Below are positions 1 to 26,297 of a stretch of DNA of 37,488 nt, in pieces. The stretch spans positions 49,633,519 through 49,671,006 of the forward strand of contig NC_068996.1 in assembly GCF_001194135.2 (NCBI RefSeq), in the 5' to 3' direction. Origin of the DNA: Octopus bimaculoides (lineage: Eukaryota). A program made the position numbers and the translations under genes. Each line of letters opens with the position of its first letter. Position 1 is the first letter of the stretch. The notes beneath the pieces are model-generated. The model made no database searches. It had not been told where the DNA came from and was given only the letters and a program-made list of their open reading frames with translations.

Positions 1-283
1 TCCGACATGACCGTTGAAGTCTCCAGCCACAAAGAGAAGGTCCCTGTCACTCGTCGACGAGGTAGTTTGCAAGAGGGTGTCATAGAATTGGTCTTTCAGA
101 CCATCTGGTAGCCCAGGTTGAGGTGCATAGGCTGAGATGACAGTAGCTAATCTATGATGAAGCACTAGTCTGATCTTAAGTACTCTGTCACTTACTCTAA
201 CGACCTCGATTACCTTATCCACCCATTTCTCCGCTAGAAGTATTCCTACGCCCCCGACCCCGTCAGTGTTCCCTGCCCAGATA
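1..283 (-). mobile_element. RTE-clade LINE, endonuclease (EEP/APE) coding segment, 5'-truncated, runs off the left edge of the window
   Basis: Manual minus-strand translation is stop-free: WAGNTDGVGGVGILLAEKWVDKVIEVVRVSDRVLKIRLVLHHRLATVISAYAPQPGLPDGLKDQFYDTLLQTTSSTSDRDLLFVAGDFNGHVG. It carries the GVG, SAYAP and GDFNGHVG motifs typical of RTE APE endonucleases. Confidence 0.9.
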
Positions 284-584
284 GTGCTAAAAAGTACAGA
301 AGTATTAGTAGCAGATGGAAAGTAATCAAAACAGCTGCTATGGAACTGCTAGATCAAATGATTTTCTGGATATTGACACATCATAGCTAGCAAGCAGGCA
401 CTATCCACCGTGTGCTTAGAAAAATTTCGCCTCTACTGATATTAGAAAAATAGAGGTGAAATTTGTCTAAGCATGCACTTGATAGTGGATAACAATATGT
501 AGAAATTGTGTGATCTAGCAATTCCACTGCTGTTGTTGGATGCTACTAATTATTTGCTACTAATATTTCTGTGCTTTTTAGCAC
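284..584. mobile_element. Foldback (palindromic) MITE-like element, about 300 bp
   Basis: Ends gtgctaaaaagtacagaagtattagtagc and gctactaatatttctgtgctttttagcac are inverted copies. Inner arms ggaactgctagatca/tgatctagcaattcc also pair, and 412-435 pairs with 451-474 at 21/24. Confidence 0.7.
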
Positions 585-763: not shown

Positions 764-841
764 CCATTCCTAAAGCAATTTCAGTCATACTGCGACACAA
801 TGAATCAAGGCTATCATTAATTTCTCTGTCTATTTCTATCA
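764..841 (-). CDS. SAMD4: Smaug/SAMD4 exon, C-terminal conserved motif (phase 1-1, 78 nt)
   Basis: tttttcag|TG ATA GAA...GGA ATG G|gtaag. Translates IEIDREINDSLDSLCRSMTEIALGM, resembling vertebrate SAMD4 [21 protein letters not shown] (recalled). Confidence 0.88.
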
Positions 842-972
842 CTGAAAAATTAAACAGATAGAATAAAATTTAATTAATGCATTACAGAAAATTCAAATGT
901 GCTTAAAAAGACAAACATGAAATTAATCTAAGAGGTATACACCAAAGATAAATCTATAGACCGATACCTTTG

Positions 973-1126: not shown

Positions 1127-1519
1127 TATCCCTGTCAAATCTCTTCCTAATACCTCCTTCTACTTGTCGCCACCCACTACATTCCCTCCAAGCCATCTCC
1201 AACTCTTTCTGAATCTCATGGGCTTACCCACCTACTCACCCTATCCAATCCCTGGTTCCACTTCACTTATATATATATATACCCCACACTCTTACATGAG
1301 TGTGTGTGCCCTGCCACCACATCTTCACCATTGTATCTCCATTCTTTCTCTCTCTCTCCAACTAAGGTAGTCATGGATCTCCTCTACTGTAAGACACCTA
1401 TTTCCGTCCCTCTCTTCATACGCCAACCCCTCATCACTTGGCACAGAACCACCTCCATCAATACTACTTTCCACTCAGTTGAAATGCATTAGATTTGCTT
1501 GCTATTATCAATAAATTGA

Positions 1520-1915
1520 ATAAGGCAGCAAGCAGGCAGAATTGTTAACACACTGAACAAAATGCTTAGCAGTATTTCGCCCAGTTCTATGTTCTGAGTT
1601 CAGTTTCCGCCGACATTGATAAGTACCATTGTTGGCACTCCGTCGCTTACGATGTCGAGGGTTCCAGTTGATCCGATCAACAGAACAGCCTGCTCGTGAA
1701 ATTAACGTGCAAGTGGCTGAGCACTCCACAGACATGTGTACCCTTAACGTAGTTCTCGGGGATATTCAGCGCGACACAGAGTGAGACAAGGCTGACCCTT
1801 TGAAATACAGATACAACAGAAATAGGAAGAAAGAGTGAGAGAAAGTTGTGGTGAAAGAGTACAGCAGGGTTCGCCACCATCCCCTGCCGGAGCCTCGTGG
1901 GGCTTTAGGTGTTTT
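1520..1915. mobile_element. Composite SINE: family-A head joined to an inverted family-B body
   Basis: 1520-1615 matches the aaggcggcgagctggcagaa head. From about 1630 to the gap the sequence is near-identical to 35093-35370. Confidence 0.7.
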
Positions 1916-2225
1916 NNNNNNNNNNNNNNNNNNNNNNNNNNNNNNNNNNNNNNNNNNNNNNNNNNNNNNNNNNNNNNNNNNNNNNNNNNNNNNNNNNNNN
2001 NNNNNNNNNNNNNNNNNNNNNNNNNNNNNNNNNNNNNNNNNNNNNNNNNNNNNNNNNNNNNNNNNNNNNNNNNNNNNNNNNNNNNNNNNNNNNNNNNNNN
2101 NNNNNNNNNNNNNNNNNNNNNNNNNNNNNNNNNNNNNNNNNNNNNNNNNNNNNNNNNNNNNNNNNNNNNNNNNNNNNNNNNNNNNNNNNNNNNNNNNNNN
2201 NNNNNNNNNNNNNNNNNNNNNNNNN

Positions 2226-2427
2226 ATTCTTTTACTTGTTTCAGTCATTTGACTGCAGCCATGCTGGAGCACCGCCTTTAGTTGAATAAATCGATCCCAG
2301 GACTTATTCTTTGTAAGCCTAGTACTTATTCTATTGGTCTCTTTTTGCCGAACCGCTATTTTACGGGGATGTAAACACACCAACATTGGTTGTCAAGCGA
2401 TGGTGGGGGGACAAACACAAACGACAA

Positions 2428-2462
<35 letters not shown>

Positions 2463-2598
2463 CGACGGGCTTCTTTCAGCTTCCATCTACCAAATCCACT
2501 CACAAGGCTTTAGTCGGCCCGAGGCAATAGAAGACACTATAGAACCCGGAACCATATGGTTGGGAAGCAAGCTTCTTAGCACACAGCCACTCCTGCGC
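2226..2598 (-). mobile_element. tRNA-derived SINE, family C (most abundant in the window)
   Basis: tRNA-like head at the right end, internal (AC)n(AT)n, and tail cttttacttgtttcagtcatttgactgc. More than 10 related copies occur in the window. Confidence 0.85.
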
Positions 2599-3160
2599 AC
2601 TTTAACTTTTTTTTTCTTCTTTCCCTTCAGGGTTGAAGTTGTCTTAGGTGGGATTTGAACTCGGAACATAAATATTTTACCTCCCCTTTTGTTCAAAACC
2701 AACCAGATCCAGCTTCTTACACCTACCCTACAATACCATTCCCAAAGTAAAGAGTCACATCACATAAATTTCACATCTCTGAGATAAAGCATGACTAATT
2801 GAATACAATGTGAATAGAAAATTGTCATGTTTGGTAGAAGAATATGAATACTAAAGGGTTAATTATAAAACACAATAAGATTTTTTTTAAACAACAAATA
2901 GCTAGGAGGATCCATCCAAGTAAAATAGGAATAAAAATTGAGAACCATTGGTCAACACAATTCTTGACATATTTTGCATTCCTCCTCCTCCTCTTGGGTC
3001 TTCACTCATTTAAGGAGTTATAGGAACAGCATTATGAAATATGGTATATCTTGGGCATTTTAAACCTAGCAGAGTGGACCCCTCTTCAAGCCTTCAATAT
3101 AAGAGAAAGGGTTATTCCTACACACATTCTCCAAGACTGTATTACAGTACCTCTCTTATA

Positions 3161-3498
3161 AAAATGAGTAAAGACCCACTTCGGTCATGAATAACCATGG
3201 GACTGCACCTAGAAAGTTAACCTCGGAGGGACAAGTCTGGGCAAGATTATTTATTATTTATGCAAGTCAACCATGCATACAAGCCTCCTCTCTCCACACC
3301 ACCAATGTTATCCAAGAAAAAGGTAAAGGGGCCGATACAGCTTGGTACCAGTGATGTCGCAACTTATTTCTATAGCTGAGTGAACTGGAACACGTGAAAT
3401 AAATTGTCTTGCTGAAAAACACAACACATAGCCCAATCTGGGAATCGAACTCACTACCTCATGACTGTGAGCCCAATGCTCTAACTGTTGAGCCATGC
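3161..3498 (-). mobile_element. tRNA-derived SINE, family E, with 12-bp TSD
   Basis: A-box/B-box-like head (tggctcaacag...gttcgattcc on the minus strand). TSD acctctcttata at 3149-3160 and 3499-3510. Second copy at about 21590-21915. Confidence 0.85.
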
Positions 3499-4698
3499 AC
3501 CTCTCTTATACAGAACACTAATTAAGTCATCTGTAGCTGCTTAACCAGACAAGAGAATACAATGTTTCACACAGCTGCCATGATATCAGCTTCATCTTTC
3601 CCAAACAAGGGTAATGAGGAAATATGTGGTCACTTCAAATGTTAGAAAAAGCAGTCAGATCTTGCTCAAATCACAACTTACTAGCATAAAAAAAAAAAAG
3701 AAAAAAAAGACGCCTGATAAAATGTCTGACAGTAAATATGATGCTTGGTCATGGCTGGAATACTTTTGACAATAGACTCAGTTGAAATTGACATGAAACA
3801 ACAACAGAAACAGCAGTAACAACAACAACAACAGTAAATTCTTCAGGGTTTGTACAGACAAAAGAATGCTCCCTGTATGCTCTGGAATGAAGGAAAGCAT
3901 AGGGCCTGGAGCATTTNNNNNNNNNNNNNNNNNNNNNNNNNNNNNNNNNNNNNNNNNNNNNNNNNNNNNNNNNNNNNNNNNNNNNNNNNNNNNNNNNNNN
4001 NNNNNNNNNNNNNNNNNNNNNNNNNNNNNNNNNNNNNNNNNNNNNNNNNNNNNNNNNNNNNNNNNNNNNNNNNNNNNNNNNNNNNNNNNNNNNNNNNNNN
4101 NNNNNNNNNNNNNNNNNNNNNNNNNNNNNNNNNNNNNNNNNNNNNNNNNNNNNNNNNNNNNNNNNNNNNNNNNNNNNNNNNNNNNNNNNNNNNNNNNNNN
4201 NNNNNNNNNNNNNNNNNNNNNNNNNNNNNNNNNNNNNNNNNNNNNNNNNNNNNNNNNNNNNNNNNNNNNNNNNNNNNNNNNNNNNNNNNNNNNNNNNNNN
4301 NNNNNNNNNNNNNNNNNNNNNNNNNNNNNNNNNNNNNNNNNNNNNNNNNNNNNNNNNNNNNNNNNNNNNNNNNNNNNNNNNNNNNNNNNNNNNNNNNNNN
4401 NNNNNNNNNNNNNNNNNNNNNNNNNNNNNNNNNNNNNNNNNNNNNNNNNNNNNNNNNNNNNNNNNNNNNNNNNNNNNNNNNNNNNNNNNNNNNNNNNNNN
4501 NNNNNNNNAATCACCCCTTCAGGAAGCAACAATACTTTCAGAATACACATGGGTTCCTAAGTTAGAGTTTGTTAAAAAAAGGATTGTTTCTGGGAGACAA
4601 TAGGAGCTGGCTTTCTGGTCTTGGGAGGAGGAAATAATAGACAATGGCTTATCAGGAGCAGACCACAGTGCCTTTTATGTACGGCGGGGGGGGGGGTC

Positions 4699-5165
4699 TT
4701 TTATTCTTACTTGTTTCAGTCATTTGACTGTGGCCATGCTGGAGCACCACCTTGAAGTGATTTAGTCAAATAAATTGACCCCAGGATTTAACATCTTTTT
4801 TGAAAGCCTGGTACTTATTCTATTGGTCTCTCTTTGCCAAACCACTAAGTTACAGGGACATAAACACACTAACACCAGTTGTGGGGGACCAACACAGACA
4901 TAAAGAGATACACATAGATATACACATGTATCATCGTCATTTAATATCCATTGTCCACGATGGCATGGGTTGGACAGTTTGACAAGGGTTGGCAAGCTGC
5001 ACCACACTCCAGTCTGATTTGGCATGGTTTCTACGGTTGGATGCCCTTCCTAACACCAACCACTCTACAGAGTGTGCTGGGTGCTTTTATGTGCCACCAG
5101 CAGAGATACCATTTGCATGACACCAGTATCTGCCACAACTGCCATTTTACTTGGCTTAAAGGTCA
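4699..5165 (-). mobile_element. Partial family-C SINE (4699-4925) followed by an RTE 3'-UTR fragment (4930-5165)
   Basis: Matches the family-C tail, then the (CAT)n-tailed gtttctacggttggatgcccttcctaac motif of the RTE 3' end. Confidence 0.75.
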
Positions 5166-5879
5166 TGTTCTAAAACACCAAACAGAGAGGCTTGTCTGAG
5201 AGTAATGTCTGGACAATATTTTATAATCAGTACCACAAAAAAGCTAATTGGAATCTTGCTAAAATACACAGAAAAGTTGAAGGTTTTACTTGATATGATT
5301 GGAAGAGATGAATAATTTGAACAGCAATATAGTGTAGTAATGAGGGTTTTCAAAACTAATTTAAAGTGGAAGTTAATAATGAATTCTTTGATTAGTACAA
5401 ATGCATAAATTTGTAAGAGAGAATATGAAGTCAATTAGTTTTGACATGTTATGTAATTTGTAATTGTTTTATTGCCCTGTGAGGAATGAAATGCAAAGTT
5501 GCTTGAAGCATTGTAGTATAGATGTAGAATAATGAATGAAATGAGAAATAAGGAAATCTAACAATGCAGGAAGTTTTTTTTTGTTTTTTTTTAAACCTTT
5601 ATATTTCAGTTACCAAGATCCTATCTTCAGAAGAATACAGTCAAAGAAATATGTATTTACATAGATCCTGCCATTTTGGATAGCCCGATGTTTAAGTTGG
5701 CAATAGCAGAAACTCCCCAAATAATGTAGTTGGTATCATAGAAGTCATGTTGGGGACGGTAGTGCTAATTAATGACATGCATCAAAATCCTATGAAAACT
5801 CACCCCACCCTAACCAATTGTCTGGCAAAAAAACCAAAGCTATGGGAATAAGATTGAGAGAGAAGACCCAGTTAAACTA

Positions 5880-6570
5880 AAGTCTCATTTGGCTTTGTGA
5901 GGAGACACTCCAGAGGTGTACCAATGATGGTGATTGCTGCATTTTGCTGACTGCCACAAACGAACGTTTTTTGGACTGAATAGTGACTGGTGACCAGAAA
6001 TGGGTTTTCTATAAAAATGTCAAGTGCTGAAGACAGTGGGTAGGGAAGGGAGAAACACCGACACCCTAGGCTAAAGAAGGTCTTCACTCACGTAAAGTGT
6101 TGTTATCTTTTTGGCAGGATATGAAAGGTTCAGTCCACTTTGAACTTTTAAAGCCAAACCAAACGATAACAGAGGAGATCTACTGTGAGCAGCTTAAAAG
6201 TCAACGCTAGAAGAAAAATTACCATCTTTGGTTTCAAGACAAAAAGGGGTTCTTCCATCAGGATGATGCTCGGCCACAGACAGCAAGGATGACATTCCAA
6301 AGGCTGGAGCAGTTTGAATAGGAAATGATGCCCCCACCACCATATTCACTTATTCTGCAGTCTTCAAAATCATTTAGACGGAAAAATATGAATTCTGTCG
6401 ACGAGGTCAGAACAGTATTGGAGGAGTATTTTTCTTCATGGACAAGTGAATTTTGGAAGAGGGGCCTTGCAAGTCTACCAGATAGATGGAAGGACATTGT
6501 AGAAAATGAAGAATATATTTTAGAGTAAAAAAGAACTTTGTTTATCTTAATTTTGAAAAATAAAAGTATT
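5880..6570 (+). pseudogene. Decayed mariner (DD34D, Mos1/Hsmar-like) transposase, 5'-truncated
   Basis: Frameshift-corrected reading: FLD*IVTGDQKWVFYKN...KVLLSFWQDMKG...FELLKPNQTI...FHQDDARP...PPYS...YFSS...FWKRGL..LPDRW..IVEN. Multiple stops and frameshifts; ends at a gap. Confidence 0.9.
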
Positions 6571-6924
6571 NNNNNNNNNNNNNNNNNNNNNNNNNNNNNN
6601 NNNNNNNNNNNNNNNNNNNNNNNNNNNNNNNNNNNNNNNNNNNNNNNNNNNNNNNNNNNNNNNNNNNNNNNNNNNNNNNNNNNNNNNNNNNNNNNNNNNN
6701 NNNNNNNNNNNNNNNNNNNNNNNNNNNNNNNNNNNNNNNNNNNNNNNNNNNNNNNNNNNNNNNNNNNNNNNNNNNNNNNNNNNNNNNNNNNNNNNNNNNN
6801 NNNNNNNNNNNNNNNNNNNNNNNNNNNNNNNNNNNNNNNNNNNNNNNNNNNNNNNNNNNNNNNNNNNNNNNNNNNNNNNNNNNNNNNNNNNNNNNNNNNN
6901 NNNNNNNNNNNNNNNNNNNNNNNN

Positions 6925-6988
<64 letters not shown>
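6925..6988. repeat. (GA)n microsatellite immediately downstream (transcript sense) of the 7000 donor
   Basis: Direct reading; the left end is bounded by an N-gap. Confidence 0.95.
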
Positions 6989-6989
<1 letters not shown>

Positions 6990-6999
6990 ACATACATAC

Positions 7000-7204
7000 C
7001 TCTATTGGATTTGAGACCACGCTGGGGCTATATGAATTTTTTCTATTTATTGGAATGTGCCCACAACCTATAACCGAAGACCGTTTAGAACCAAAACTCC
7101 ATTGAGATAGACCAGCAGCAGTAGGTTTCTGGGGATCTCGTAGCATCCTTTGACTACCCATTCTCATATTAGAGTTAGCACAAATAGGAAATGTATTGCC
7201 CCAA
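7000..7204 (-). CDS. SAMD4: Smaug/SAMD4 exon, low-conservation C-terminal region (phase 2-0, 205 nt; alternative donor at 6996)
   Basis: tttttttcag|T TGG GGC...ATA GAG|gtatgt. Open frame WGNTFPICAN...SVVSNPIE, and the start phase matches the AA| end of exon 9748-9648. Homology is weak, so support comes from splice sites and phase. Confidence 0.75.
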
Positions 7205-7865
7205 CTGAAAAAAAATAATATAAAGTAAATGTAAGTTATATGAGTTAAACAGGTTTTTTAAGAATTATTATTATTATTATTTTTTTTACAAAGAATACAA
7301 CAGCACATCTGTGAGTTAATAGTTGCAGTATGTCATTATAAGTGGTTCTTTGCCAATCATTGAAATGGCTTCTTGAAAATGGTTTACAATGTTTGCAAAT
7401 AGATATCTGGTACTCTGTTGGTTATGACGAGTGTTTCAGTTGATCCAATCAACAGAAATTAACATGAAATTAATCTGCAAGTATTTGAGCACTCCACAGA
7501 CACACGTACTCTTAATGAGGTTTCCAGAGAGATTGAGTGTGACACAGAATGTGACAAGGTAGTTAGGTTCAGTGTGCGTGTGCGAGTCTAGTAGTAGTGC
7601 AACTCAAAGAACTGCATTGGTAGACAAAATGAAGGATATCAACAAACTAACAAAGATACTTTTTTACCAGAGTGAGATGGCCCTGTTATGATTATGACAG
7701 CTCGTAAGGAAGTGCAATGCACACAGGAATCCTTTGCTTTTGTGATCCTTTCCCAAATGTTGTCTGGTTTCATCCAGGCATTGCAGATAGTGTTCATCTA
7801 TAGAGTTGTAGTTATCAGTAAACCTCTTGGAATGAGGACTTTGGCCGTGTGAAGTATATGAACAG

Positions 7866-9647: not shown

Positions 9648-9748
9648 TTTTTCCTTGGTTTTACATCTATGGTATATTTAGGAGGTGAAGTGATTTGGAT
9701 TTGCTGCTTCCAGGATGTCAGTAATTTCCTTTGTTTTTGAGTAAAAGC
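9648..9748 (-). CDS. SAMD4: Smaug/SAMD4 exon, end of PHAT domain (phase 0-2, 101 nt)
   Basis: ttcttgcag|GCT TTT ACT...AGG AAA AA|gtaaga. Translates AFTQKQRKLLTSWKQQIQ, matching SAMD4 AFTETQKKRLLSWKQQVQ (recalled). Confidence 0.93.
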
Positions 9749-18601: not shown

Positions 18602-19061
18602 TTAATAAATATAAAATATTAAATTTGGTTCATTAGTATAAAGTTGTTTTTTTTTAACAAAGTATCTCATGTAAAAGCACGTTTAATCTTATCTTGTGGT
18701 AACAGATTATCTTAATCCTTTGCCTGTCCAAAGTATTTTCATAAGTTTGTCCTAAACATCCGTGCTTGCTTTCAGTCTTGAAGTTAGCCTTTGTTTCATA
18801 CATTCTGAGTAATATAAAACTTTCTTTTCAAATGTCCCGAGTAATTCTGATAGTTGAAAAGAATTGGGAATATGTGTATCATACACAATGCATGAACGCC
18901 AGGGAAATATGTGACATGCCAGAGATATTTCCCTGGCATGTCACATGGGATATACAGGAGAGGAAAAAGGGTTAATAGAAGATTTTCATTAAGCACTAAG
19001 ATATGGCATGGTCAGTCCTTTCAAATATAGAAACTTTTTAGATGAAAAAGGTTATAATTAC

Positions 19062-19148
19062 CTGTTCTAAAGTCCTCAAAAGCTTGTGTCTATCTTTTAA
19101 TTTCTGTATACTTAATACTATTTTGTGTCGTGCTCCTTTTGTAACATT
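19062..19148 (-). CDS. SAMD4: Smaug/SAMD4 exon, C-terminal half of the SAM domain (phase 0-0, 87 nt)
   Basis: gattcttttcag|AAT GTT ACA...GAA CAG|gtaatt. Translates [29 protein letters not shown]. Confidence 0.97.
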
Positions 19149-19617
19149 CTGAAAAGAATCAAAAAATCATTCCATGAAATAAACCAATGCTTCTGTAGTT
19201 TTAGAAACACAGATGTGTCTCAGTCTTCTAAATCAAACCACAAGGCTTTGGTTGGCCGAGAGCAATAGCAGAAATCCCTTGCCTAAGTTGCAGCACAGGG
19301 AGACGAAACCTAAAAACCATACAGAATTAGGTACAATAACATCATTTAACCTTTTGGGACTATTTTTAATGAAGTAAGCCGTCTATGCATTTTTAAATTA
19401 ATCTAATAACCAACTTCATCATTAAATTGTTGTTTAGAATATAATTGAAGAGATGGAAAATTTTAATTTAAATATGAACAATTTTAAAATTATTGGTTTT
19501 GCATCATTGATGCCCGTTCACAGTTTCAAGCAGCTTGGTGTCAAAAAATGCAAATATTTGAGTAAGTTGACTCATTATTGGCCAATGTTTTATTTTAGGG
19601 ACAAAGATTTTAAATTT

Positions 19618-21915: not shown

Positions 21916-22073
21916 ACAAGTTACATGTATGTAAATTTATCCAGATCCATGAACTTCACTACAAAGTTTCCTCTGATGCAAACAGTCGTTAATTTCCTCA
22001 GACTGATTCCTGGCAGCTTTATGCTCCTAGAAGGGAAAGCAACAACATTTTACATTTTATGTTCCTGTAATAC

Positions 22074-22183
22074 CTGCTCTTCGAGCCATTGCTCAGAAAG
22101 ATCCATCATGTCTTCATAACTCAACAATTGAAATAAGTAGGAGTATTTGTGCAATCGCAGACTTTTCAACCAAATAGGAACAT
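22074..22183 (-). CDS. SAMD4: Smaug/SAMD4 exon, N-terminal half of the SAM domain (phase 1-0, 110 nt)
   Basis: tttttgttgtag|AT GTT CCT...GAG CAG|gtatta. Translates (D)[46 protein letters not shown] is the Smaug/Vts1 RNA-binding SAM signature. Confidence 0.97.
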
Positions 22184-22998
22184 CTACAACAAAAATAAAA
22201 TAAATCAAAATAAATCAAAAATGAAAACAAAAACCAGAAAGCAAAAACAAAAAAAAAAAAATCAAATTGTTATTTGCAAATATACATAAAAAAAACATAA
22301 GTATAGTAATGTATCTTAGAATAATAATCTATATTTTACTATGGTAATTATTCTATAGAATAATAACCATAGTAAAATAAAAGTGTGTGTGTGATCATTG
22401 TTTGAGCATCTAGTTTTCTATGCTTGCATGGGTCAGACAGAATTCAATGAGAGTTTTTCTATAGCCAAATGACCTTCCTGTTTCCAAGCAGAGTAATATT
22501 TCTTTATGGTTGGACATATTTTCACAGAAAATTGGAAGCCATAGGCACTGCTTGCAGTGATGGTTCCTTTACAACCATCACATGATGTCAAAACACAATC
22601 AAAACCCCCCACCCCTATACACATATGTCACAATATATAGATTCAAGTAATCCAGTGGTACTCATAAAAAAAGCTCTTTAATGTATCATCATTCTAGAAA
22701 ACATATCGTACGATCCAGGAGAAAACAATAAGGGGCATATAAAATTATGAATAACGAGAGAAATAATTTGTCATGAAATTTGAATTTTCTTATTGTTAGA
22801 TAAAATTTCATCAAATTGTTTTGTAACTTAAAAACATGTAAATAATTTATATTATCGTATCTAATAAATCAATTACTTACATGCAAAAAATCCTTCAAAA
22901 TAATGCAGAATTTAAGCTACGTCTTCAGGTGAAAGACAGTCTTTGTTAAATAGTAAATTCTCTTACATACATAAACACAGACACATCGAACTTCTTTC

Positions 22999-23829: not shown

Positions 23830-25902
23830 GATCTTTCACCCCACTACAATTTTCCCAGGCCCCACAATAGGAATCACCAATCTAAAATGTTTGTGAAAAC
23901 TCAATCATGGAAAATGGTGGTTGTAAAGTGCAAGGAGAACAAGTGAGAGCTATGAATAGATACATCATCATTTAATGTCCCCTTTTCCATGGGGCATTTG
24001 CATTCACAACTGCCAGATTATGGCTTTGTGCTTCCCAAACCGGGTTGTGTATTGTGTTCTTTGAGCAAAACACTTTATTTCATGTTGTTCTCATTCACTC
24101 GGCCATAAACGAGTAACCTTGTTACAGACCGGCATCTTGTTTAGGGAGAATGTTATGATCTGAGCCACTTATACAGCATGGAAACAATGTATGCAGCCCA
24201 AGTTCTTCCTAGAACCCAAGAAAGATTTTCACAGGCCATGGGGAAAATAGGTTGGGAAACATTGCTTTAGACTTTTGTGTAATACCCTGCAAACTCAGAT
24301 ATAATCTTGTGGATTATTCTAACACCCGTAATATCAGGATACATCAATATCGGCAGATTTTCTTTCTACAGCTGAATCCCTTATCACAAACCCTTGCTTG
24401 TTTACAAATAAGATATTTTTCTTAATCCATGAAACAGGAACAGCACAATGTCCCAGACATGATTTCACAGACAGTAATGTCCTGAGGTCACCTGTTATTC
24501 TTTTTTCTTTAAGGGTCCAATGGAATTTACTTAGGCAGATTTTCAACAATCAGATGCCCTTGCTGTTGCTAACTCTCACAGGTTTCCAACCAAGAAAGGT
24601 AATATTTTCCCCCTTGGCCAGAGGTGTTTCCATAAAAGAGACTACAATGAATGACATTGCTTGTATGACGATAACATTCACAAACTGTTATCACAAGATA
24701 ACAAAACAGGGACACATACATCCACACTTGAGAGGTCGGGCTTCTATCAGGTTCTACCTACCAAATCCACTCACCTCAGCTCACATGAGGGGTATAATAG
24801 AAGTCACTTTCCCAAGAGGCCACACAGTGGGACTGAACCTGATACCATGTGGTTGGGAAGTGGATTTTTTAACTACACATCCATGCCTATGCCCTGTCAT
24901 GTCTGCAAGAGCAAGCACAAGCAGGAACGGATGAAGTATATTTTGTGATGTTTTGTTCATTTATATATGATATCGTATAAACTTTCATAATTATTAATGG
25001 AAAATAAAATTAATGATATCTGCCTGTGGATAACATCTGGATAACATTTAAACTAAATTGATATCAAATTTCAGTAATTTGGAATTCTTGATTAAAAATT
25101 ATTTCTATTACAATTTATTAATGCTTTTGACTTGAAAGTTGATACAATATTTATTTGGTTGCAGGAATTCACAAGCTGCTTTTGTTGCAACTTCATAGTT
25201 TGAACTTAAAAAAAAAAAAAAAAAAAAAGATACTTTATTTCAATTTATAGTCAAGGAAATCTTATAATTTCATAACTAGAAAGATCTTTTTAATGCTAAA
25301 GTTCAGTATCTTGGATACATTATATTGAATATATGCCGTGCTTGAGTAGACCTACTGAGTCAAATAAATCAAAATCAAATTAAATGGAAATTGTAGTTGT
25401 GGTAAATACCAGTGCTGATCGCCGCCAGAGCTGCCTGACTGGGTCCATACTGATGGCATGTAAAAAGCACCCACTAAACTCTGAGTGGTTGGCATTAGGA
25501 AGGGCATCCAGCTNNNNNNNNNNNNNNNNNNNNNNNNNNNNNNNNNNNNNNNNNNNNNNNNNNNNNNNNNNNNNNNNNNNNNNNNNNNNNNNNNNNNNNN
25601 NNNNNNNNNNNNNACCATGTGGTTGGTAAGCAAGCTACTTACCATACAGCCACTCCTATGCCTCAAATTTCAAAGTTTTCAAATTTTTTTGCAGTCTTTC
25701 CTTATTCTAGCTACTATATTTTCACCATTGCTGGCAATAAATAATAACGATTAGTCTAACAAAGCATTTCTTAGGCTCAATGGGTTAACTCATACATAGT
25801 TTCTAAACAGGGGGGGAATTGTGATGGCAGGGTTAGGTTGGAGGTGTTGCCAACAAATTGGCCTGATCAATAAACTCTTAAGAGTTAAATGGCTAATCTT
25901 AC

Positions 25903-26148
25903 CTTGCATGCCACTACCAGGTTCTGTGAAACTATTCCGGATAGGCTGACCACCTTCATCTTGATGTGTGTCACTACCACTCCCTGATGAAGTCACACTG
26001 CTCTGAGGTGATAATGGTGCATGATCTGAAGTGCTAGATAATGGACGTATACGGGAATAAGGATCTTCACATTTTGCTAGCCAGTCTGATATATTATCAG
26101 GGGGTGTAACAGAATTAGTTCGCCGTAAAGGAGTGTGTGAATTGATGC
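25903..26148 (-). CDS. SAMD4: Smaug/SAMD4 exon preceding the SAM domain (phase 1-1, 246 nt)
   Basis: tttttatttcag|GC ATC AAT...ATG CAA G|gtaaga. Translates INSHTPLRRTNSVTPP...SDHAPLSPQSSVTSSGSGS...RNSFTEPGSGMQ, matching SAMD4 SPLKRSVSLTPP...SDHAPLSPQSSVASSGSG...RNTFQEEGSGMK (recalled). Confidence 0.96.
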
Positions 26149-26297
26149 CTGAAATAAAAAAGAAATATATATATATATATATACAATATCAAATTAAAAA
26201 TTTTAATAAGTTAGCATTAAAAGATAATTAATCCTTTTAGGTATGTTTCTTGTATACTTAAGTCACCTGTTAAAATAGTATATATGTTTAGTTAGTG

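What the first reader, a model, noticed from the sequence alone, without database searches (positions are those of the whole stretch)
6990..7000. 4-nt tandem donor (GAG|GTAT|GTATGT) that could switch the conserved C-terminal motif on or off
Seen: exon 7204 ends in phase 0 at 7000, but the next recognised exon (841) starts in phase 1. Joining 7000 to 841 gives GAG|TGA TAG, an immediate double stop that drops EINDSLDSLCRSMTEIALG. A second GTATGT donor 4 nt downstream (exon end 6996) gives GAG GTA T|TG ATA (E-V-L-I) and restores the frame. Inference: either a donor-shift switch between truncated or NMD-prone and full-length Smaug, or a missing phase 0-1 exon. That exon could sit in a gap (6571-6924, 3917-4508, 1916-2225) or be the weak 79-nt candidate at 4614-4536 (KASSYCLPETILFLTNSNLGTHVYSE). 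A missing exon is at least as likely, since the 7000 donor is the stronger one.
Basis: partly seen in the sequence, partly recalled or inferred. Interest (0 to 1): 0.7.

Follow-up and report, generated by a model that had tools for sequence, protein, structure and literature searches.

The report
Missing Smaug exon, not donor switch
The reading-frame break that suggested a 4-base splice-site switch in this Smaug (SAMD4) gene comes from an unsequenced assembly gap hiding an ordinary 79-base exon, which every RNA data set examined splices in between the two known exons.

Summary
The sequence facts are correct. On the minus strand, exon 7204-7000 ends in phase 0 at GAG|GTATGTATGT, and exon 841-764 starts in phase 1. 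A direct 7000>841 join reads GAG TGA TAG. The headline interpretation, a donor-shift switch, is not supported. In 9 of 9 RNA contig sets from seven studies the exon ends at 7000 and continues with CCTGTAAAATCAGCTGTTACTAAAACACAA, a sequence that is nowhere in the window. Two long transcript contigs place 75 foreign bases, plus TCAG, between 7000 and 841. That is a 79-nt phase 0-to-1 exon which keeps the frame open. No RNA covers 6996-6999 and no contig joins 7000 directly to 841. The hidden exon's peptide, PVKSAVTKTQ[5 unknown]SSQMNYLLSQS, aligns with the conserved K-x-x-V-x-R/K-T-x-S-A/L-P block of Smaug orthologues. That block appears to be the human SMAUG1 Ser665 14-3-3 motif region. With the real exon in place, 7000 is the in-frame donor, and 6996 would break the frame with a TAA nine codons after GAG. 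Its candidate at 4614-4536 is wrong. I could not tell which of the three gaps (6571-6924, 3917-4508, 1916-2225) holds the exon. This is an ordinary assembly artefact of low interest.

The parts
7000..7204 (-). Smaug coding exon (WGNTFPICANS...VVSNPIE). Acceptor ttttttcag|T at 7204. Ends in phase 0 on GAG at 7000.
   Evidence: Sequence and translation. RNA contigs of 9 runs cover exactly 7000-7204 with loose ends on both sides.
6990..6999 (-). GTATGTATGT: the donor in use (GT at 6999-6998) plus a second GT 4 nt downstream (6995-6994) for which no use was detected.
   Evidence: Depth is 0 at 6985-6994, and the 6995-7004 bin has half the depth of the next bin in all 12 RNA runs laid. Match to CAG|GTAAGT is 7/9 for the 7000 site and 6/9, without the -1 G, for the 6996 site (read from the sequence).
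6925..6985 (.). (CT)n/(GA)n microsatellite that borders the gap just inside the intron.
   Evidence: DNA contig depth there is in the millions, so the flank cannot be walked.
6571..6924 (.). Assembly gap (354 N), one of three possible hiding places of the 79-nt exon.
   Evidence: The flanks are a high-copy mariner-like element and the microsatellite.
3917..4508 (.). Assembly gap (592 N), a possible hiding place. DNA contigs bridge it with 567-569 real bases that I could not read.
   Evidence: a joint 3916>4509 with '567 letters between' in X25, X28 and X30. The 30-nt loose ends at both edges do not match the exon.
1916..2225 (.). Assembly gap (310 N), a possible hiding place, flanked by very high-copy repeats.
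764..841 (-). Smaug exon encoding the conserved C-terminal motif ([V]IEIDREINDSLDSLCRSMTEIALGM). Starts in phase 1. Donor GG|gtaaga lies after 764.
   Evidence: RNA contigs match 764-845. The motif is conserved in the orthologue alignment A1.
842..845 (-). TCAG: the last 4 nt of the intron, which are identical to the last 4 nt of the missing exon. This is why contigs appear to match up to 845.
   Evidence: The canonical AG is at 843-842.
9648..9677 (-). 3' end of the preceding exon (...YTIDVKPRKN), with donor AAAAA|gtaaga after 9648.
   Evidence: The loose end at 7204 in all runs maps uniquely to this place (donor).
22053..22214 (-). Open segment holding the first SAM-domain exon ([36 protein letters not shown]).
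   Evidence: Pfam SAM_1 E=3.8e-8. PDB 1OXJ Smaug E=2.2e-16.
19041..19166 (-). Open segment holding the second SAM-domain exon ([29 protein letters not shown]).
4536..4614 (-). Rejected: it is not an exon of this mRNA.
   Evidence: RNA depth is 0.03-1.5 in the 4500-4699 bin. Its sequence is unrelated to the real inserted sequence.

Best explanation
The window carries the 3' two-thirds of a Smaug/SAMD4 gene on the minus strand. Between exon 7204-7000 and exon 841-764 the mature mRNA contains a constitutive 79-nt exon: CCTGTAAAATCAGCTGTTACTAAAACACAA, then 15 nt not read, then TCTTCCCAGATGAACTATCTTCTATCCCAATCAG. This exon has not been assembled and must lie in one of the three N gaps of the 6.1-kb interval, or on an unplaced piece. 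It converts phase 0 to phase 1, so the normal donor at 7000 gives an uninterrupted frame: ...SNPIE|PVKSAVTKTQ.....SSQMNYLLSQS|VIEIDREINDSLDSLCRSMTEIALGM. The second GT at 6995-6994 is a by-product of the donor consensus and a short GTAT repeat. It is not a switch. With the true downstream exon it would shift the frame: GAG GTA TCC TGT AAA ATC AGC TGT TAC TAA.

Shown: the junction sequence, the 75+4 nt spacing, the absence of the sequence from the window, and the homology of the peptide. Inferred: that the exon sits in a gap of this locus, that the canonical AG at 843-842 is the acceptor in use, and that the 5 unread codons carry the S-A/L-P core.
For: 1. Nine RNA contig sets from seven studies (X1, X3, X7, X8, X10, X11, X13, X15, X16) all end at 7000 and continue with the same 30 nt.
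2. In X3 (a 1,972-nt contig) and X8 (1,236 nt), the same contig holds 7204-7000 and 845-764 separated by exactly 75 nt. The joint 845>7000 is listed.
3. The first 30 nt are absent from the window even with 3 mismatches, and no 11-mer of the 64 known nt occurs anywhere in it.
4. 79 = 26x3+1, so the frame stays open across both junctions with no stop in the 64 known nt (read from the sequence).
5. The peptide aligns with the conserved block of Smaug orthologues: Nucella AKQAVCRTHSAPLRSSQLALSQS, JGI protein P0002 VKQPLTRTQSAPIKSS..LSQR, and rat SSVQKTRSLPVHTSPQ.
6. Gene identity: SAM_1 E=3.8e-8, PDB 1OXJ Smaug E=2.2e-16, and 106 Smaug homologues.
Against: The exon itself was not seen in genomic DNA. 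The gap flanks at 6571-6924 are high-copy and unreadable. The bases bridging gap 3917-4508 exist but were not printed.

Logan contigs drop rare variants, and only about 6 raw RNA reads touched the exon, so isoforms at the few-percent level are not excluded. The middle 15 nt of the exon are unread. X10's contigs break inside the exon, which hints at sequence variants there.
Confidence: 0.93

Rival explanations
1. Donor-shift switch. Splicing alternates between the 7000 and 6996 donors and joins directly to 841. This would yield full-length Smaug (6996) or a truncated, NMD-prone form (7000).
For: The tandem GTATGTATGT exists, and the arithmetic of the two direct joins is right.
Against: No RNA contig in 9 runs and no raw read in 3 runs covers 6996-6999, and none joins directly to TGATAGAA. 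An intervening 79-nt exon is always present. With that exon, 6996 breaks the frame rather than restoring it. The E-V-L-I junction has no counterpart in orthologues, whereas the hidden exon does.
Confidence: 0.01
2. Low-level unproductive splicing. The 6996 donor (+4 nt) or skipping of the 79-nt exon (7000>841) occurs in a minor fraction of transcripts. Either event creates a premature stop, either as GYNNGY-type noise or as NMD-coupled tuning of Smaug level.
For: GYNNGY sites are the most common alternative 5' splice sites, and most regulated ones are proposed to act through NMD (PMC4267661). The exon length is not a multiple of 3, so skipping would be frame-breaking. The data here, contigs plus about 6 raw reads, cannot see rare isoforms.
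Against: There is no positive evidence at all. The 6996 site lacks the -1 G and matches the consensus less well than 7000. The same paper concludes that such events are mainly noise.
Confidence: 0.15
3. The 79 nt do not belong to this locus. The transcript contigs would be assembly chimeras, or the scaffold is mis-joined so that 7204-7000 and 841-764 are not neighbours in the genome.
For: The exon was not located in DNA, and the interval is rich in repeats and has three gaps.
Against: The identical junctions occur in independently assembled contigs of 9 runs from seven studies. The order of blocks (WGNTFP block, R/K-T-x-S-x-P block, INxxLxSLC motif) is the order found in all orthologues. Both window exons have canonical splice sites in the right phases for a 3n+1 insert.
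Confidence: 0.03

Closest known systems
Smaug / SAMD4 (Drosophila Smaug, vertebrate SAMD4A/B, yeast Vts1) C-terminal region
   Same: The SAM domain is most like Drosophila Smaug 1OXJ. The tail has the same order of blocks: G-N-T/S-F/L-P, then R/K-T-x-S-A/L-P, then (E/D)-I-N-x-x-L-(D/E)-S-L-C-x-S-(M/V)-T-E-x-A-L. I count the serine of RTRSLP as residue 665 of the 718-aa human protein (54 residues from the C-terminus in the vertebrate tails P0004 and P0010). Ser665 is one of four 14-3-3 binding motifs of SMAUG1 and has Arg at -3 (bioRxiv 10.1101/2023.02.09.527857).
   Different: Here the motif reads MTEIALG rather than MTEHALG. The mRNA splices on after ALGM into a further exon outside the window (DSPTTIIYPP...) instead of ending about 10 residues later as in the orthologues. 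The serine core of the 14-3-3-like block falls in the 15 nt I could not read.
GYNNGY tandem 5' splice sites (delta-4 tandem donors)
   Same: There are two GT dinucleotides 4 nt apart, and use of the second would shift the frame and create a premature stop.
   Different: The defining property, use of both sites, was not seen in any of 12 RNA runs. This is a constitutive donor that merely has the common GT at +5/+6.
Gene-model frame breaks caused by exons lost in assembly gaps
   Same: There is a phase mismatch between neighbouring annotated exons, N gaps lie in the intervening intron, and transcripts carry extra in-frame sequence that is absent from the assembly.
   Different: Nothing differs. 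This is the textbook case.

Membership tests
Smaug/SAMD4 family | RNA-binding SAM domain of the Smaug/Vts1 type | tested here: met
   Pfam SAM_1 E=3.8e-8, above the cut-off. The best PDB hits are Smaug 1OXJ (2.2e-16) and Vts1 (about 1e-5).
Smaug/SAMD4 family | PHAT-type helical region directly after the SAM domain | tested here: inconclusive
   The 67-aa piece from 15710-15354 gave no Pfam hit on its own. However, NIMSGGSIKTALAELKSILNTPMKA...LPKQFTRVMGK parallels the orthologues' region after the SAM domain, and BLASTP coverage of the composite query reached 50%.
Smaug/SAMD4 family | Conserved C-terminal INxxLxSLCxSxTExAL motif | tested here: met
   Eleven invariant columns (I, N, L, S, L, C, S, T, E, A, L) across mollusc, priapulid, JGI and rat sequences.
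Smaug/SAMD4 family | N-terminal Smaug similarity region (Vts1-like domain, PF25479) | not tested
   The upstream part of the gene was not modelled. It may lie beyond the window.
Alternatively spliced GYNNGY tandem donor | Two GY dinucleotides 4 nt apart at an exon end | tested here: met
   GAG|GTATGTATGT at 6999-6990.
Alternatively spliced GYNNGY tandem donor | Both GYs used as splice sites in transcripts | tested here: not met
   Only 7000 is used in 9/9 contig sets. There is no coverage of 6996-6999 in any of the 12 RNA runs. Sensitivity to rare isoforms is low.
Alternatively spliced GYNNGY tandem donor | Tissue-dependent ratio or conservation of the tandem site (regulated subclass) | not testable with these tools
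   Contigs give no isoform ratios, and no orthologous genomic sequence was available.

The most novel reading that the evidence does not exclude
The 79-nt exon (3n+1), or the +4 donor, is used as a regulated unproductive-splicing valve. Skipping the exon, or shifting to 6996, would remove both the 14-3-3-like block and the C-terminal motif and send Smaug mRNA to NMD in particular tissues or stages.
Probability: 0.04. Interest if true: 0.3.

Novelty: not a real feature. Interest (0 to 1): 0.07.

Why it matters
Mainly as a caution. A phase mismatch next to N gaps should be read as a missing exon before any regulatory splicing is proposed, and a GT four bases into an intron is the norm, not a signal. 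In practice, any gene model for this Smaug orthologue built on this assembly alone will lack 26 codons or be truncated. Those codons include the block that appears to correspond to the human SMAUG1 Ser665 14-3-3 site. The model should be repaired from transcript data.

Tried and rejected
1. Laying RNA on 1300-7290 to find the intervening exon. Repeats swamped the output, and no exon appeared between 7000 and 1300.
2. Searching the window for the junction sequence. It is absent.
3. Printing the 75 inserted letters from a stretch spanning both exons. The joint 845>7000 was listed, but its letters were pushed out of the table by repeat-derived joints, so 15 nt remain unread.
4. Protein search with the exon-7204 peptide. 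No candidate was found, so this species' protein is not in that collection.
5. Walking into gap 6571-6924 with DNA contigs. This was hopeless because of the (CT)n tract and a mariner-like high-copy flank.
6. Gap 3917-4508. It is bridged by DNA contigs, but only 30 nt at each edge were shown and neither matches the exon.
7. Rejected on sequence and on RNA depth.
8. Pfam on raw six-frame stretches.

Full report
**What is in the sequence**

The gene runs on the minus strand. Exon 7204-7000 follows a ttttttcag acceptor. It is open in only one frame (WGNTFPICANSNMRMGSQRMLRDPQKPTAAGLSQWSFGSKRSSVIGCGHIPINRKNSYSPSVVSNPIE) and ends on a whole codon, GAG, at 7000. It is followed by gtatgtatgtcc, a (CT)n tract (6985-6925) and a 354-N gap.

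Exon 841-764 follows tttttcag and begins tg|ata gaa. It reads [x]IEIDREINDSLDSLCRSMTEIALGM, so it starts in phase 1. A direct 7000>841 join gives GAG TGA TAG, and a 6996>841 join gives GAG GTA TTG ATA. Three N gaps (6571-6924, 3917-4508, 1916-2225) lie between the two exons.

**Is the tandem GT remarkable?**

No. GT at intron positions +5/+6 is part of the donor consensus GTRAGT (established knowledge). In this window 8.8% of all minus-strand GTs have a GT 4 nt downstream, and 2 of 13 GTATGT hexamers are in tandem. [quoted passage not shown] Against CAG|GTAAGT, the 7000 site matches 7 of 9 positions. The 6996 site matches 6 of 9 and lacks the -1 G.

**What the RNA shows**

- I laid public RNA data of the same organism on 6975-7260. 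In nine independently assembled contig sets from seven studies (X1, X3, X7, X8, X10, X11, X13, X15, X16), the contig covers 7204-7000 exactly. It then continues with one and the same sequence, which on the transcript strand reads CCTGTAAAATCAGCTGTTACTAAAACACAA.
- Depth at 6985-6994 is zero in all twelve RNA runs laid. The 6995-7004 bin has half the depth of its neighbour, which is what coverage stopping at 7000 produces.
- The few raw reads behave the same way (X48: 1 read, X50: 2, X51: 3).
- No loose end sits at 6996, and none reads TGATAGAA.
- On exon 841-764, the contigs of X3, X8 and X10 match 764-845. Upstream they carry ...TCTTCCCAGATGAACTATCTTCTATCCCAA.
- In the 1,972-nt X3 contig, 7204-7000 occupies contig positions 1244-1448 and 845-764 occupies 1524-1605. 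In the 1,236-nt X8 contig the numbers are 618-822 and 898-979. Exactly 75 nt lie between them in both, and a stretch spanning both exons lists the joint 845>7000.
- The four bases 845-842 (TCAG) are the end of the intron before the canonical AG|T at 841. The foreign exon evidently also ends in TCAG, so the insert relative to a 7000|841 join is 79 nt.

**Frame**

79 = 3x26+1, which is exactly the phase 0-to-1 converter that is needed. The reading is GAG | CCT GTA AAA TCA GCT GTT ACT AAA ACA CAA [15 nt] TCT TCC CAG ATG AAC TAT CTT CTA TCC CAA TCA G|TG ATA GAA. This translates as E|PVKSAVTKTQ.....SSQMNYLLSQS|VIEIDREIND..., with no stop in the 64 known bases.

With this exon in place the logic of the finding reverses. 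Donor 7000 is the productive site. Donor 6996 would give GAG GTA TCC TGT AAA ATC AGC TGT TAC TAA, a stop nine codons after GAG.

**The exon is not in the window**

The first 30 nt have no match even with 3 mismatches. No 11-mer of either known part occurs anywhere on either strand. The exon therefore lies wholly in a gap or on an unplaced piece.

It is rejected.

**Identity and conservation**

- Two open segments upstream (22214-22053 and 19166-19041) join to [65 protein letters not shown]. This hits Pfam SAM_1 (E=3.8e-8). Among solved structures it is closest to Drosophila Smaug 1OXJ (E=2.2e-16), followed by yeast Vts1.
- A composite query returned 106 Smaug/SAMD4 proteins. The best is from the gastropod Nucella lapillus at 50% identity, so the host is plausibly a mollusc. 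That is an inference; the organism is coded.
- In the alignment of C-terminal regions (A1), the hidden exon's peptide lines up with a conserved block. The window gives PVKSAVTKTQ-----SSQMNYLLSQS, Nucella AKQAVCRTHSAPLRSSQLALSQS, JGI protein P0002 VKQPLTRTQSAPIKSSFGLSLSQR, Priapulus GGIQRTKSAPTRPP, and rat SSVQKTRSLPVHTSPQ.
- The five unread codons fall on the S-A/L-P-x-x core.
- Counting from the C-terminus of the vertebrate tails (54 residues in P0004 and P0010), the serine of RTRSLP is residue 665 of the 718-aa human SMAUG1. Ser665 is one of four 14-3-3 binding motifs and has Arg at -3 (bioRxiv 10.1101/2023.02.09.527857). This equivalence is my inference.
Columns I, N, L, S, L, C, S, T, E, A and L are invariant.

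**Where is the exon?**

Not determined.

- Gap 6571-6924 is bordered by the (CT)n tract on one side and by a high-copy mariner-like element on the other (Transposase_1 E=4.4e-8 at 6097-6210). DNA contigs pile up by the thousand there and nothing can be read.
- Gap 3917-4508 is bridged by single DNA contigs in three runs, with 567-569 real bases between the flanks. Those letters were not printed, and the 30 nt shown at each edge are not the exon.
- Gap 1916-2225 sits in very high-copy repeats.
- The budget for laying reads was then exhausted.

**Verdict**

The apparent switch is an artefact of an incomplete assembly.

What remains open is only noise-level use of 6996, or rare skipping of the 79-nt exon. 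Contigs and about six raw reads cannot exclude either.

Confidence that a constitutive hidden exon explains the frame break is 0.93. Interest is low.

Noticed in passing
window 764 and beyond the window start (<1): After ALGM the mRNA splices from 764 to an exon that is not in the window (ATAGTCCTACTACCATAATATACCCGCCGG = DSPTTIIYPP...) in X3, X8 and X10. Orthologues end within about 0-14 residues of ALG. Reading through the 764 donor would give GMGKN-stop, an orthologue-like ending. The tail of this Smaug may be extended or alternatively terminated.
   Followed up: partly
missing 79-nt exon (not in window), run X10: In X10 (depth about 245) the contigs stop 12 nt into the hidden exon and resume 33 nt before the end of its 75 unmatched letters (37 nt before the exon's own end). 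Other runs assemble straight through. This fits two or more variable positions about 30 nt apart inside the exon, either SNPs or RNA editing. One would fall in the unread 15 nt that should encode the S-x-P core.
   Followed up: no
window 3917-4508: This N gap (592) can be closed. Single DNA contigs of X25, X28 and X30 join 3916 to 4509 with 567-569 bases between them.
   Followed up: partly
window 6097-6528 (+): A degenerate mariner-like transposase remnant (Pfam Transposase_1 E=4.4e-8). It has very high copy number in DNA and RNA contigs and abuts gap 6571-6924.
   Followed up: partly
window 1-348 (-): A 116-codon open frame runs off the window start (GILLAEKWVDKVIEV...FVAGDFNGHVG). Its only Pfam match is weak, to Endonuclease-reverse transcriptase (E=0.15). 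RNA depth is several hundred to about 1,500, and many reads leave at 281 into the same foreign sequence. It is probably an expressed LINE-like repeat.
   Followed up: partly
window 1500-2700 and 4700-5100: Very high-copy interspersed repeats, with RNA contig depth of 10^4-10^5. Position 1682 reads G instead of A in most of that depth in all four RNA runs. This is more likely a repeat-family consensus difference than editing.
   Followed up: no
window 7110-7139: In X7, one 60-nt low-depth contig (depth 4) leaves the exon at 7110 into unrelated sequence (transcript sense GTCCAATCTCTGAAGGAGATACTTCACAGG). There is no GT at that point. It is probably a chimera or a paralogous fragment.
   Followed up: no
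window 25793-26188 and 22053-22214 (-): The exon ending ...EPGSGMQ (CAG|gtaaaa, phase 0) and the SAM exon (gtag|AT GTT CCA, phase 1) also disagree in phase when read naively. A 100-N gap (25514-25613) lies between them. This may be a second case of the same artefact or a mis-set boundary.
   Followed up: no
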